Assembly (NCBI GenBank): GCA_951406725.2
Contig: OX597823.1
Coordinates: 38,212,001 to 38,274,000, forward strand
Length of the DNA: 62,000 bases
Direction of reading: 5' to 3'
Origin: Octopus vulgaris
Lineage: Eukaryota
The position numbers and the translations under genes were made by a program. Within the stretch, counting starts at the first letter, position 1. Each line of letters begins with the position of its first letter. Positions 21,827 through 23,570 of this stretch are shown here, piece by piece. The notes under the pieces are model-generated. The model saw nothing but the letters and a program-made list of their open reading frames with translations, was not told the origin of the DNA and searched no databases.

Positions 21827-22368
21827 GTATTTGCTGGGGATTGCTGGGGAGGGTTAGCACCTATGGTCTTTGCAGTTATCCTAGACTGGTGAGATCAATA
21901 TCATTCATTAATGTTCTTTTAACAAAAGTTTAGGAAAGAAGGACTAAACATAGTAATTAGTGTAAGGCTTGGACAGGAGGGAGAGTGTTGGAGACAACAA
22001 AGATAATGAGAGGAGAAGAGACAAGTGGTTAGGGAAAACCTGAATGGAGCTCATGACGTGCACCCAGACTGTCTCAAGGAGCAGAGGCCATTATAGTAGT
22101 GGTAGAAATAGCAGAGGGAGGATGATTGTGGCTAGGAAATCTTTGATCAAGGATGACATGTTGCAGTAATATTGATATGAAATATTTTGGTGATCAAAAC
22201 TGTGTAATCTGCATCATGTTTTGGTGGAGAATGTTGCTGGGAAATTGCCATAAGTGATCATAGTTTATAGTGAGTTAGGGCTCCAAACACTAAGTGATCA
22301 TGTTGTAGTGATGGGTGGGAATAATGATGGCAGCAGTGGAGATGGAGTGGTGATAGTGGTGGTGGTTG

Positions 22369-22400
<32 letters not shown>

Positions 22401-22608
22401 ATGATGATAATGGTGGTGATAGTGATGGTGATGGTGGTGCTGATTATGTGCCATATCTATCATTAAATGAACCGTACCTGACATTATTGCTTTTGGTACA
22501 GTGAAAAATTTGGTCCAGAGAAAATTGATTTTCCAATTGATTTTATTATAGACATTGTTTTACTTACTTCAATACATTACAAGTGTACACACATACACAC
22601 ACCTATAT

Positions 22609-22725
<117 letters not shown>

Positions 22726-22847
22726 CACACATATAAGATATATATATATTATGTATAACCCATGCTATCATGGAAAGTGGACGCTAAACGATGATGATGA
22801 TGACACACACACACATATATATATATATATAATGCAGTTCTATATTT

Positions 22848-22984
22848 AAATGATGAGGAATTATGTGCATTATTTACATTTGAAGGATATTTCATCTTGT
22901 TTCGGATGATATACCCTCCAGCCTTCATCAGTTATCTTGAGGGAAATTTCAAACCTGAGTTCTCATTCCTAAGGTATTTTTTGA

Positions 22985-23073
<89 letters not shown>

Positions 23074-23313
23074 TCACTGCCTGGAATCAAACTTGGGATC
23101 TTGGCGTTAGTAGCCCAAGATTCCAAGTTCGATTCCAGGCAGTGTCCTGAATAATGATAATAATAATAATAATAATGATAATAATAATAATAATAATAAT
23201 AATAACATCGAAAAAGACCTTAGGAATGAGAACCCATGTTTGAAATTTCCCCAAGATACCTGATTAAGGCTGGAGTGAGGACAAACATCCATCAAATGTA
23301 AATAATGTAAATA
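22848..23313. mobile_element. Head-to-head hairpin of a tRNA-headed, (AAT)n-containing element with hammerhead-like tail
   Basis: 22861-23104 pairs with 23115-23313 around a 10-nt spacer; B-box-like AGTTCGATTCC at 23126-23136; CTGATGA..GAAAC on minus strand at 22899-22931. Confidence 0.85.
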
Positions 23314-23334
23314 ATATATATATATTCATCCTTT

Positions 23335-23570
23335 TACTCTTTTACTTCTTTCAGTCATTTGACTGCAGCCATGCTGAAGCACTGTTATAGAAATCAACCC
23401 CAGAACTTATTCTTTATAAGCCTAGTACTTATTCCATCAGTCTATTTTGCCGAACCACTAAGCTATGGCAACATAAACACACCAAAAGTGGTTGTCAAAT
23501 GATGGTGTGAGGACTTACACAAACACACAAATACATACATACATACAAACATATATATATACATATACAT

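What the first reader, a model, noticed from the sequence alone, without database searches (positions are those of the whole stretch)
22848..23313. tRNA-headed element with a hammerhead tail, folded back on its own anticodon-like stem
Read outward from the centre, each arm has a tRNA 3'-half-like head (GGGCTACTAA(C)GCCAAGATCCCAAGTT(C/T)GATTCCAGGCAGTGACC), an (AAT)n linker, then a tail with CTGATGA-A-GGCTG..CATCC-GAAAC (left arm; probably CAGCC originally). The right arm has lost the second half of the motif. The inversion point is the CCAAG microhomology at the anticodon-like hairpin (spacer 23105-23114), as expected from snap-back priming. Inference: a Pol III SINE that uses a PLE-type, ribozyme-bearing 3' end. 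SINEs are normally partnered with LINE tails, so a PLE-dependent SINE would be unusual.
Basis: partly seen in the sequence, partly recalled or inferred. Interest (0 to 1): 0.8.

Follow-up and report, generated by a model that had tools for sequence, protein, structure and literature searches.

The report
Inverted twin Penelope-element end, ribozyme broken
The inverted repeat is an old, decayed double insertion of the end piece of an abundant octopus Penelope-like retrotransposon; it is an ordinary footprint of that element class, and the hammerhead ribozyme that the family carries is broken in both copies here.

Summary
Two arms (about 22830-23116 on the minus strand, 23114-23315 on the plus strand) are 88% identical. 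Each has a head remnant, (AAT)n and a tail.

It is not a free-standing SINE with a borrowed tail. Head, (AAT)n and tail are collinear with an abundant RT + GIY-YIG Penelope-like element (PLE) of this octopus genome. They form its inter-ORF spacer plus its first 44-54 codons, which is a pseudo-LTR.

The family consensus tail holds a textbook PLE minimal hammerhead: ACAC-CUGAUGA-A-GGCUGG..UCAGCC-GAAA-CGUU|GUGU. It occurs 2,935 times at one mismatch or fewer. Both window arms have lost the cleavage site. The left arm carries a rare 18-nt deletion form (13 copies genome-wide).

Four features match the published PLE insertion signature:
- a head-to-head inverted pair;
- 5' truncation of both arms;
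- a roughly 35-nt extension at one outer end only;
- (TA)n on both flanks.

One SINE-like point survives. About 85% of well-preserved heads start sharply at the head, 14 nt upstream of an A-box-like motif. However, tRNA models do not recognise the head, and Pol III use is untested. The PLE's own promoter combined with internal RT initiation explains the sharp start equally well.

The parts
22815..22829 (.). (TA)n microsatellite, left target flank
   Evidence: Read directly. It matches the (AT)n on the right flank. PLEs favour AT-rich and microsatellite targets (PMC8557442, PMC11167929).
22830..23116 (-). Left arm: a 5'-truncated PLE pseudo-LTR unit (head nt 33-85, (AAT)n, tail with extension)
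   Evidence: 90% identical to the family consensus. It is arm 1 of the inverted repeat.
22830..22866 (-). PLE 'tail' extension (ACATAATTCCTCATCATTTAAATATAGAACTGCATTA), present on this arm only. In the full element it is coding and runs on into the ORF.
   Evidence: Family copies end either before or after this roughly 34-nt piece. It continues into the ORF N-terminus in L050 and at 101 genomic places. The one-sided 30-40 bp tail is a PLE hallmark (PMC8557442, PMC11167929).
22899..22931 (-). Hammerhead remnant: CUGAUGA box, extra A, helix II GGCUG/CAUCC (one mismatch), GAAAC. An 18-nt deletion follows that removes the 3' half of helix III, the cleavage site and the 3' strand of helix I.
   Evidence: Alignment to the long-variant consensus. 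No full descriptor match in the window. The short form has 13 genomic copies against 2,935 for the long form.
22964..22966 (-). Start codon of the PLE ORF (GGA-ATG-AGAAC), left arm
   Evidence: The consensus frame from this ATG is open through the hammerhead and the extension, and it is continuous with the PLE N-terminus.
22987..23069 (-). (AAT)n linker, left arm
23070..23116 (-). Head remnant, left arm (GGGCTACTAACGCCAAGATCCCAAGTTTGATTCCAGGCAGTGACCTG). The B-box-like motif is kept and the A-box-like motif is lost.
23114..23116 (.). Junction of the two arms: a 3-nt overlap (CCC)
   Evidence: Read from the alignment of each arm to the head consensus.
23114..23315 (+). Right arm: a 5'-truncated PLE pseudo-LTR unit (head nt 44-85, (AAT)n, tail without extension)
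   Evidence: 91% identical to the consensus. It ends at ...AAATGTAAATAATGTAAATAAT, the inner of the two family end points.
23150..23205 (+). (AAT)n linker, right arm
23226..23228 (+). Start codon of the PLE ORF, right arm
23260..23275 (+). Hammerhead remnant, right arm: CUGAUUA (G8 changed to U), extra A, 5' strand of helix II. A 39-nt deletion follows.
23316..23325 (.). (AT)n, right target flank

Best explanation
The feature is one old insertion event of an abundant octopus Penelope-like element (PLE). It left two 5'-truncated copies of the element's pseudo-LTR unit, head to head, in a (TA)n microsatellite.

The unit is the PLE's inter-ORF spacer plus the first 44-54 codons of its ORF. The spacer consists of a head with A-box-like and B-box-like motifs, then (AAT)n. 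The codons embed a minimal type-I hammerhead.

Shown here:
- collinearity of the unit with the RT + GIY-YIG ORF on both sides;
- the hammerhead in the family consensus and its loss in both window arms;
- two alternative 3' end points about 34 nt apart;
- the high frequency of inverted pairs;
- the (TA)n flanks.

Inferred from published PLE biochemistry: the PLE protein cut both strands of the AT-rich target. It primed reverse transcription on both strands from internal start sites about 130 and 165 nt into the ORF. This gave the extension on the left arm only. The two cDNAs stopped inside the head and were joined at a 3-nt overlap.

Both arms are now inert. Neither has an A-box region, a cleavage site or an ORF. 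They are roughly 9-10% diverged from the consensus.
For: Family size and link to the PLE:
- The tail is a genome-wide repeat, with at least 1,712 candidates.
- Upstream of the head in several loci lies an ORF with YVDD and CVYSIPCSCG..YKGET (GIY-YIG) motifs.
- That ORF has at least 13,244 candidate places in the genome. Its homologues carry RVT_1, HTH_animal and DUF8422, and some carry GIY-YIG.
- In 11 of 12 ORF-bearing loci the ORF end runs straight into head and then tail.
- The tail consensus from its ATG reads MRTQVRNFPKTPDEGWRVYQPKRCVNNKQDEDKYPSNVNNVNNVHNSSSLKYRT. It continues into the PLE N-terminus in L050. A relative, L083, gives one continuous ORF across the same junction. The extension-to-ORF junction occurs at 101 places.

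Hammerhead:
- The consensus meets all published min-HHR hallmarks of PMC4209133.
- 0 of 200,000 shuffles match the descriptor.
- The 51-mer occurs 2,935 times, with 0 for the reversed control.
- Five base pairs show changes on both sides across five relatives, including a sea urchin PLE.

Insertion signature:
- About 21 of 30 head-selected loci and more than half of the tail-selected loci are inverted pairs.
- Inverted 5'-truncated partners, a one-sided 30-40 bp tail and microsatellite targets are described for PLEs (PMC8557442).
- Cleavage and extension of both strands, and two internal RT start sites, are described in PMC11167929.
Against: - No Rfam hammerhead model scores the motif, even on intact copies. 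This is expected for min-HHRs that lack helix III, but it means recognition rests on my own descriptor and on the literature criteria.
- Cleavage was not tested.
- Two-strand priming at this particular site is inferred, not shown.
- The arms share a few non-consensus bases, which would also fit self-copying.
The pseudo-LTR layout therefore rests on L050, the pattern counts and the relative L083.
Confidence: 0.85

Rival explanations
1. The short unit is a true Pol III SINE. The head's A-box-like and B-box-like motifs drive Pol III transcription from the head start. The roughly 300-nt RNA carries the PLE's RT start sites and is mobilised in trans by the PLE. The window holds two 5'-truncated copies of that SINE. 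This differs from the best explanation only in which RNA served as template.
For: - There is a sharp 5' boundary. The head 5' 35-mer occurs 2,162 times, while the ORF-to-head junction 35-mer occurs only 319 times.
- All 30 of the best-preserved heads start at (TG)CCCATGGGCATATGG, and none is preceded by ORF sequence.
- 13 of about 23 tail-selected copies that reach the head stop within 6 nt of its start.
- That start lies 14 nt upstream of TGGCGTAGTGG (A-box consensus TRGCNNAGTGG, from my own knowledge). GAGTTCGATTCC resembles a B box.
- Both blocks are conserved in PLE relatives of 57-69% protein identity, and L083 has TGGCGCAGTGG and GGTTCAATCC.
- There is no TTTT run in the sense strand of the unit consensus.
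- SMalpha of Schistosoma is a precedent.
Against: - The head is part of the autonomous element itself, which is not the case in LINE/SINE pairs.
- No tRNA model or ARAGORN hit was found, and the head folds no better than shuffled sequence (z = +0.87).
- No diagnostic differences separate ORF-linked from ORF-free heads (only 8 ORF-linked heads were available).
- The head sits where the PLE's own promoter must be. An mRNA starting there, with RT starting at the 5'-proximal internal site, would give the same short unit without Pol III.
- The absence of TTTT is only weakly informative.
Confidence: 0.25
2. The inversion arose by snap-back. A single first-strand cDNA folded back on the CTTGG/CCAAG hairpin in the head and copied itself.
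For: - The arms share some non-consensus bases (for example AAGATA instead of AAGACA). They are closer to each other (12% different) than the sum of their distances from the consensus.
- There is a short complementary stretch at the turn.
Against: - The arms differ at their outer ends, with the extension on one side only.
- In sister loci the two arms of a pair are different structural variants. In L002, L003, L019, L020 and L021 one arm is the short form and the other the long form. Self-copying cannot produce this.
- Inner break points of partner arms are scattered over the whole unit.
- PLE protein is known to prime on both strands.
Confidence: 0.12
3. It is a foldback or MITE-type DNA transposon, or a hairpin RNA (miRNA-like) gene, and not a retroelement footprint.
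For: - It forms a long hairpin.
- Rfam gives sub-threshold hits to miRNA precursor models over the centre (MIR7533 at 69.8 bits against a gathering score of 230).
Against: - Those hits are generic hairpin matches far below threshold, and nothing reaches gathering score in the window.
- Each arm on its own is a dispersed repeat that also occurs solo and attached to a PLE ORF.
- Partner arms in other loci break at different points, so there is no fixed terminal inverted repeat.
Confidence: 0.02

Closest known systems
Canonical endonuclease-positive Penelope-like elements (Penelope/Poseidon type), in particular the Anolis Poseidon element PAc (PMC11167929) and the general PLE insertion architecture (PMC8557442)
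   Same: [quoted passage not shown]
- A hammerhead at the pseudo-LTR/ORF junction, with the ORF starting just upstream of or inside the ribozyme.
- Two reverse-transcription start sites 100-170 nt into the ORF, giving an optional 30-40 bp 'tail'.
- Frequent 5' truncation.
- Inverted 5'-truncated partner copies.
- AT-rich or microsatellite targets.
   Different: - The octopus family and its closest relatives carry a conserved module with A-box-like and B-box-like motifs, followed by a microsatellite, in the spacer between the stop codon and the next start codon.
- About 85% of well-preserved copies begin exactly at that module.
- The PLE clade was not determined here. No CX2-5CxxC motif lies upstream of GIY-YIG in P0122.
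PLE minimal hammerhead ribozymes (Cervera and de la Pena 2014, PMC4209133)
   Same: - CUGANGA and GAAA boxes.
[quoted passage not shown]
- A G10.1-C11.1 pair.
- A long helix II (5-6 bp).
- A short helix I (4-5 bp).
- Palindromic ACGU in place of a helix III hairpin, which implies action as a dimer.
   Different: - The window's own copies are deletion derivatives without a cleavage site.
- Activity was not assayed.
- Rfam hammerhead models do not score the motif.
SMalpha SINE-like retrotransposons of Schistosoma (Ferbeyre et al. 1998, as cited in PMC8490949)
   Same: A short, abundant, non-coding unit with Pol III-type boxes (from my own knowledge of that paper) and a type-I hammerhead, in a genome that also has PLEs with hammerheads.
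   Different: - SMalpha has a canonical hammerhead and is treated as a separate element.
- The whole octopus short unit is a sub-segment of the autonomous PLE.
- No sequence similarity between the two was tested.
Animal non-LTR retrozymes (bioRxiv 10.64898/2026.07.22.740005)
   Same: Non-coding, hammerhead-bearing sequences related to PLE pseudo-LTRs and proposed to depend on PLEs.
   Different: Retrozymes are tandem arrays thought to give circular RNAs. The octopus units seen here are dispersed single or inverted-pair copies, and no tandem arrays were seen in about 80 loci.

Membership tests
Penelope-like element (insertion footprint / pseudo-LTR) | Physically linked to an ORF encoding RT plus a GIY-YIG endonuclease | tested here: met
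   For the family, the ORF end runs into head then tail in 11 of 12 loci. YVDD and GIY-YIG-type motifs are present. Homologues carry RVT_1, HTH_animal, DUF8422 and GIY-YIG. The window copy itself has no ORF, because it is 5'-truncated.
Penelope-like element (insertion footprint / pseudo-LTR) | Hammerhead motif in the pseudo-LTR | tested here: met
   Met for the family consensus. Not met by the two window arms, which carry deletions.
Penelope-like element (insertion footprint / pseudo-LTR) | 5'-truncated copies, often with an adjacent inverted 5'-truncated partner | tested here: met
   The window pair. About 21 of 30 head-selected loci, and L002, 3, 4, 7, 14, 19, 20, 21, 24, 27, 29 and 30 among the tail-selected loci. 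Also seen in the relatives L047 and L085.
Penelope-like element (insertion footprint / pseudo-LTR) | [quoted passage not shown] | tested here: met
   The left arm ends with a 34-nt extension plus about 3-5 further nt (22830-22866). The right arm stops before it. Both end types are common in the family.
Penelope-like element (insertion footprint / pseudo-LTR) | AT-rich or microsatellite target | tested here: met
   (TA)n lies on both outer flanks in the window. L083 and L038 also abut (TA)n. This was not quantified across the family.
PLE minimal hammerhead (PMC4209133) | CUGANGA and GAAA boxes, with helix II closed by G10.1-C11.1 | tested here: met
   Both the consensus and the left window arm have them. 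In the left arm helix II has one mismatch (CAUCC).
PLE minimal hammerhead (PMC4209133) | [quoted passage not shown] | tested here: met
   It is A in octopus, L083, L047 and L084, and C in the sea urchin L085.
PLE minimal hammerhead (PMC4209133) | Palindromic 15.2-16.2, followed by U16.1-H17 and a helix I 3' strand complementary to the 4-5 nt before CUGANGA | tested here: met
   The family long form has GAAA-CG-UU|GUGU pairing with ACAC. Not met in the window, where this segment is deleted in both arms.
PLE minimal hammerhead (PMC4209133) | Self-cleavage (as a dimer or with protein help) | not testable with these tools
   Needs an in vitro assay.
tRNA-derived SINE | Head recognisable as tRNA-derived (cloverleaf or tRNA model) | tested here: not met
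   No Rfam tRNA hit at E up to 10 on short stretches holding intact heads. ARAGORN finds nothing. The MFE fold is not a cloverleaf (z = +0.87). Only A-box-like and B-box-like motifs, and a by-eye resemblance to a tRNA, remain.
tRNA-derived SINE | Internal A and B boxes at tRNA-like spacing | tested here: inconclusive
   TGGCGTAGTGG fits TRGCNNAGTGG. GAGTTCGATTCC fits GGTTCGANNCC at 10 of 11 positions. The two start about 40 nt apart. Both blocks are conserved in relatives. The consensus strings are recalled from memory, and function is untested.
tRNA-derived SINE | Discrete 5' end at the head; short, non-coding, high copy number | tested here: met
   2,162 head starts against 319 ORF-linked ones. 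30 of 30 best heads start at the same place.
tRNA-derived SINE | Only the 3' tail is shared with the autonomous partner, and the head is foreign to it | tested here: not met
   The whole unit, head included, is part of the PLE.
tRNA-derived SINE | Transcribed by RNA polymerase III | not testable with these tools
   No expression data are available here.
Non-LTR retrozyme | Tandem arrays of hammerhead-bearing monomers | tested here: not met
   No head-to-tail arrays appeared in the window or in about 80 fetched loci. Copies are solo or in inverted pairs.

The most novel reading that the evidence does not exclude
A PLE lineage in cephalopod-like genomes has built a conserved, tRNA-derived Pol III promoter module into its pseudo-LTR. 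Every pseudo-LTR would then be a self-transcribing SINE that carries the PLE's internal reverse-transcription start sites, so the autonomous element and its SINE are one and the same sequence. This would explain why about 85% of copies are short units starting 14 nt upstream of the A-box-like motif. It would be the first PLE/SINE partnership in which the partner carries the SINE head.
Probability: 0.22. Interest if true: 0.65.

Novelty: new member of a known kind. Interest (0 to 1): 0.35.

Why it matters
For the window itself it matters little. This is a dead, roughly 15-30-million-year-old retroelement footprint. The age is a rough figure, obtained by applying the rate implied in PMC13282606 to 6-10% divergence.

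At family level three points are useful:
- The octopus element independently shows the layout found biochemically in the Anolis PLE: the ORF start and the hammerhead overlap, there are two internal RT start sites, and the tail is one-sided. This supports that model in a distant phylum.
- An 18-nt, in-frame, hammerhead-destroying deletion form exists in at least 13 dispersed copies. This fits the in vitro finding that hammerhead cleavage is not needed for insertion. Recurrent slippage between AAAC repeats is an alternative explanation.
- The conserved module with A-box-like and B-box-like motifs at the sharp 5' boundary gives a concrete, testable candidate for how PLE pseudo-LTR units are transcribed.

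Tried and rejected
- **Rfam.** Six searches covered the window, 20 loci and three short stretches holding intact heads and ribozymes. They gave no hammerhead or tRNA hit. The only results were sub-threshold miRNA-like hairpin and microsatellite matches, which I set aside as generic.
- **ARAGORN.** It found nothing in the window or in seven loci.
- **Pfam on the 300-aa ORF fragment.** It returned nothing at E up to 0.1. Domain content was taken instead from the precomputed Pfam hits of homologues.
- **Consensus tail as a DNA query.** It 'rang nothing' because its words are too common in this genome. Exact-pattern counts replaced it.
- **Genome letters.** In particular I could not read a full-length copy with its 5' pseudo-LTR.
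- **MAFFT on the short urchin ribozyme.** It was mis-registered. I padded its loop with N to keep register.
- **Diagnostic bases.** I looked for bases separating ORF-linked heads from ORF-free heads and found none, with only 8 ORF-linked heads available.
- **RNAcofold.** Folding two ribozyme segments together did not return the double-hammerhead as the MFE structure. This is uninformative.
- **Readings considered and rejected.** Assembly artefact (the arms are only 88% identical), MITE or foldback element, miRNA gene, and retrozyme array.

Full report
**What is in the window**

The window lies on contig C10 of a 2.8-Gb, 227-contig genome. The nearest named protein match to the element studied here is from Octopus sinensis (77% identity), and the flanking repeats are octopus-like.

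At 22830-23315 there is a long inverted repeat. The repeat finder reports two arm pairs:
- 23015-23104 with 23115-23204, 94% complementary, 10 nt apart;
- 22941-23042 with 23150-23251, 93% complementary.

Aligned from the centre outward, the arms are 88% identical to each other. The quoted head motif occurs only at these two places in the window, with none expected by chance.

The left arm reads CTGATGA-A-GGCTGGAGGGTATATCATCC-GAAAC at 22899-22931 on the minus strand. The right arm reads CTGATTA-A-GGCTGGAG at 23260-23275 and then has a deletion.

**The unit is a very abundant repeat, and most of it is PLE sequence**

The window's tail finds at least 1,712 candidate places in the genome. The 40 that were scored are 81-96% identical to it.

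Reading 30 of these loci showed a complete head, CCATGGGCATATGGCGTAGTGGTTAAGAGCGCGGGCTACTAACCCCAAGATTCCGAGTTCGATTCCAGGCAGTGACC, followed by (AAT)n and the tail. Many were head-to-head inverted pairs like the window's.

In several loci the head is preceded by shared coding sequence. One 300-aa frame (P0001) contains YVDD and CVYSIPCSCG..YKGET..EH, that is, the end of an RT followed by a GIY-YIG endonuclease. It has at least 13,244 candidate places in the genome. Its homologues elsewhere carry RVT_1, HTH_animal and DUF8422, some carry GIY-YIG, and they reach about 850 aa.

In 11 of 12 loci chosen through this protein, the end of the ORF runs directly into the head and then the tail. So head, linker and tail lie downstream of the ORF of an autonomous Penelope-like element.

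**The 'tail' is the start of the next ORF**

From an ATG at tail position 23 (GGA-ATG-AGAACC), the consensus is open to the end of the unit. It reads MRTQVRNFPKTPDEGWRVYQPKRCVNNKQDEDKYPSNVNNVNNVHNSSSLKYRT.

In locus L050 the sequence after ...ATATAGAACTG continues in the same frame into ALSNRYGANTGLQW..., which is homologous to the N-terminal region of a relative. That extension-to-ORF junction occurs at 101 places in the genome.

In the relative L083 (68% protein identity, from another assembly), joining the 3' end of the unit to the partial copy in front of its ORF gives one continuous frame across the junction.

Head-(AAT)n-tail is therefore what the PLE literature calls a pseudo-LTR: the spacer between tandem ORFs plus the first 44-54 codons. 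This is the layout described for the Anolis Poseidon element. There the ORF starts at the hammerhead and reverse transcription starts at two internal sites 111-118 nt into the ORF (PMC11167929).

**The hammerhead**

Two forms of the tail exist.

The long form reads ACAC-CTGATGA-A-GGCTGG-AGGGTATA-TCAGCC-GAAA-CG-TT|GTGT. It shows every hallmark that Cervera and de la Pena list for PLE minimal hammerheads (PMC4209133):
- both conserved boxes;
- the G10.1-C11.1 pair;
- a long helix II and a short helix I;
- a palindromic ACGU in place of a helix III hairpin, which implies action as a dimer.

Four results support it:
- A descriptor written from these rules matches the consensus tail and none of 200,000 shuffles.
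- The 51-mer spanning the motif occurs 2,935 times at one mismatch or fewer. The reversed control occurs 0 times.
- Helices I and II appear in the MFE fold of the consensus.
- Across five relatives, including a sea urchin PLE (ACUC-CUGAAGA-C-GGACAG..CUGUCC-GAAA-CGUC|GAGU), five of ten pairs show changes on both sides. 88% of cells pair, against 15-40% when partners are slid. This set is small and was registered by hand.

Rfam's hammerhead models do not score the motif, even on intact copies. That is consistent with the special descriptor the original authors needed.

The short form lacks 18 nt (GTTGTGTTAACAACAAAC, lying between two AAAC repeats). The deletion removes the 3' half of helix III, the cleavage site and the 3' strand of helix I. 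It has only 13 copies at the same stringency.

The window's left arm is this short form with a further 5-nt loss and a mismatch in helix II. The right arm has a 39-nt deletion and a G8-to-U change. No full descriptor match exists in the window. The guess that CATCC was once CAGCC is correct.

**Why the copies are inverted and unequal**

Craig et al. describe PLE insertions as follows (PMC8557442):
- they are strongly 5'-truncated;
- there is often an inverted 5'-truncated copy immediately adjacent;
- a 30-40 bp tail is present at one end only;
- there is a bias for microsatellite targets.

Frangieh et al. show that a PLE protein cuts and extends both strands of an AT-rich target. They also show that the optional tail is the sequence between two internal RT start sites.

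The window shows all of these features:
- two truncated arms, starting at head nt 33 and nt 44, joined with a 3-nt overlap;
- a roughly 35-nt extension on the left arm only (22830-22866);
- (TA)n on both outer flanks.

In the family, about 21 of 30 head-selected loci and more than half of the tail-selected loci are inverted pairs. The inner break points of the partner arms are scattered across the unit.

In five pairs one arm is the rare short form and the other is the long form (L002, L003, L019, L020, L021). The arms of those pairs are therefore not copies of each other. This argues for independent priming on the two strands and against snap-back, although snap-back cannot be excluded for this one locus.

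**What remains of the SINE idea**

One SINE-like property is real: the short unit has a sharp 5' end.
- All 30 of the best-preserved heads (95-99% to consensus) begin at (TG)CCCATGGGCATATGG, and none is preceded by ORF sequence.
- Of about 23 tail-selected copies that reach the head, 13 stop within 6 nt of its start.
- Genome-wide, a 35-mer at the head start occurs 2,162 times, while a 35-mer across the ORF-to-head junction occurs 319 times.

That boundary lies 14 nt upstream of TGGCGTAGTGG. This motif and GAGTTCGATTCC resemble Pol III A and B boxes (consensus strings from my own knowledge). Both blocks are conserved in relatives of 57-69% protein identity. A strict A-box...B-box pattern was not found in the sea urchin and beetle relatives.

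Several points count against a classical SINE:
- The head belongs to the autonomous element.
- tRNA models and ARAGORN do not recognise the head.
- The head folds no better than shuffled sequence.
- No diagnostic bases separate ORF-linked heads from ORF-free heads.

The head also sits exactly where the PLE's own promoter must lie. Drosophila Penelope has an internal promoter (PMC2377424). An mRNA that starts at the head, with reverse transcription starting at the 5'-proximal internal site, would yield the same short unit as an automatic by-product. I cannot decide between these two readings without expression data. I put the Pol III reading at about one in four.

**Comparison, novelty and verdict**

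The feature is a member of a known kind: a PLE insertion footprint with a PLE minimal hammerhead. Penelope-like elements are already listed as a major repeat class in Octopus vulgaris (PMC13282606). A SINE-like element with a hammerhead is known from Schistosoma, and PLE-dependent non-coding derivatives have been proposed.

The conserved module with A-box-like and B-box-like motifs at the pseudo-LTR boundary is a possible new variant worth testing.

Both window copies are inert. Neither has an A-box region, a cleavage site or an ORF. They are 9-10% diverged from the consensus.

Interest is modest.

Noticed in passing
window 23326-23520 (minus strand): This is the 3' part of a different, very abundant octopus repeat (…CAGTGCTTCAGCATGGCTGCAGTCAAATGACTGAAAGAAGTAAAAGAGTAAAAGGATGA) with an internal (CA)n/(TA)n run. 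It directly abuts the right (AT)n flank. The same repeat appears beside PLE copies in L010, L017, L023, L065 and L070. The PLE pair may have landed in or next to this repeat's microsatellite.
   Followed up: no
window 22751-22803: ACCCATGCTATCATGGAAAGTGGACGCTAAACGATGATGATGATG matches, in reverse complement, a sequence upstream of the PLE copy in L017 (…catcatcaacgtttaacgtccgttttccatgctagcatgggt). This is the end of another dispersed repeat with an (ATG)n tail.
   Followed up: no
window 22338-22457 and 22560-22745: Long compound microsatellites lie just left of the feature: (GTG/GAT)n, and (CA)n followed by (TA)n.
   Followed up: no
L002, L003, L019, L020, L021 (octopus loci): Within single inverted pairs, one arm is the rare 18-nt-deletion form with the extension and the other arm is the common long form without it. 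Either two different RNAs served as templates, or the deletion arises during reverse transcription of one arm.
   Followed up: partly
L018, L024, L029, L040, L044, L061, L070 and window 23275/23276: Independent internal deletions cluster in and around hammerhead helix II and the AAAC repeats in many copies. This suggests that reverse transcriptase jumps at this structured segment.
   Followed up: no
family consensus, tail positions ~128-155: A 9-nt unit GTAAATAAT is present in one to three copies among family members. It lies in the ORF frame (Val-Asn-Asn), just before the inner RT start site.
   Followed up: no
ORF-to-head junction, e.g. L012, L022, L028; pattern hits: A 12-nt palindrome TGCCCATGGGCA sits exactly at the sharp 5' boundary. 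Many ORF-linked copies read CCCACGGGC instead, so CATGG may be the CpG-decayed form. Many inverted pairs are joined at this palindrome.
   Followed up: partly
L047 1409-4350; L085 93-3508; L049 1020-3549: ORF-bearing PLE copies in two other assemblies (one of them the sea urchin Lytechinus variegatus), and in this genome, also sit as head-to-head inverted pairs. In L047 the two 449-aa ORFs have identical lengths.
   Followed up: partly
L047 4630 and L084 6180: In these relatives the ribozyme reads CGGCC-AAAA-CGUU, with G12 changed to A. This change should abolish catalysis. It is shared by both arms of the L047 pair.
   Followed up: no
L033 4920-5972 (minus strand): A 351-aa open frame (…RIEGGRGLIQLENYYKITTIGLQKY…) lies next to the PLE copy. 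It looks like the C-terminal part of a different, LINE-type reverse transcriptase.
   Followed up: no
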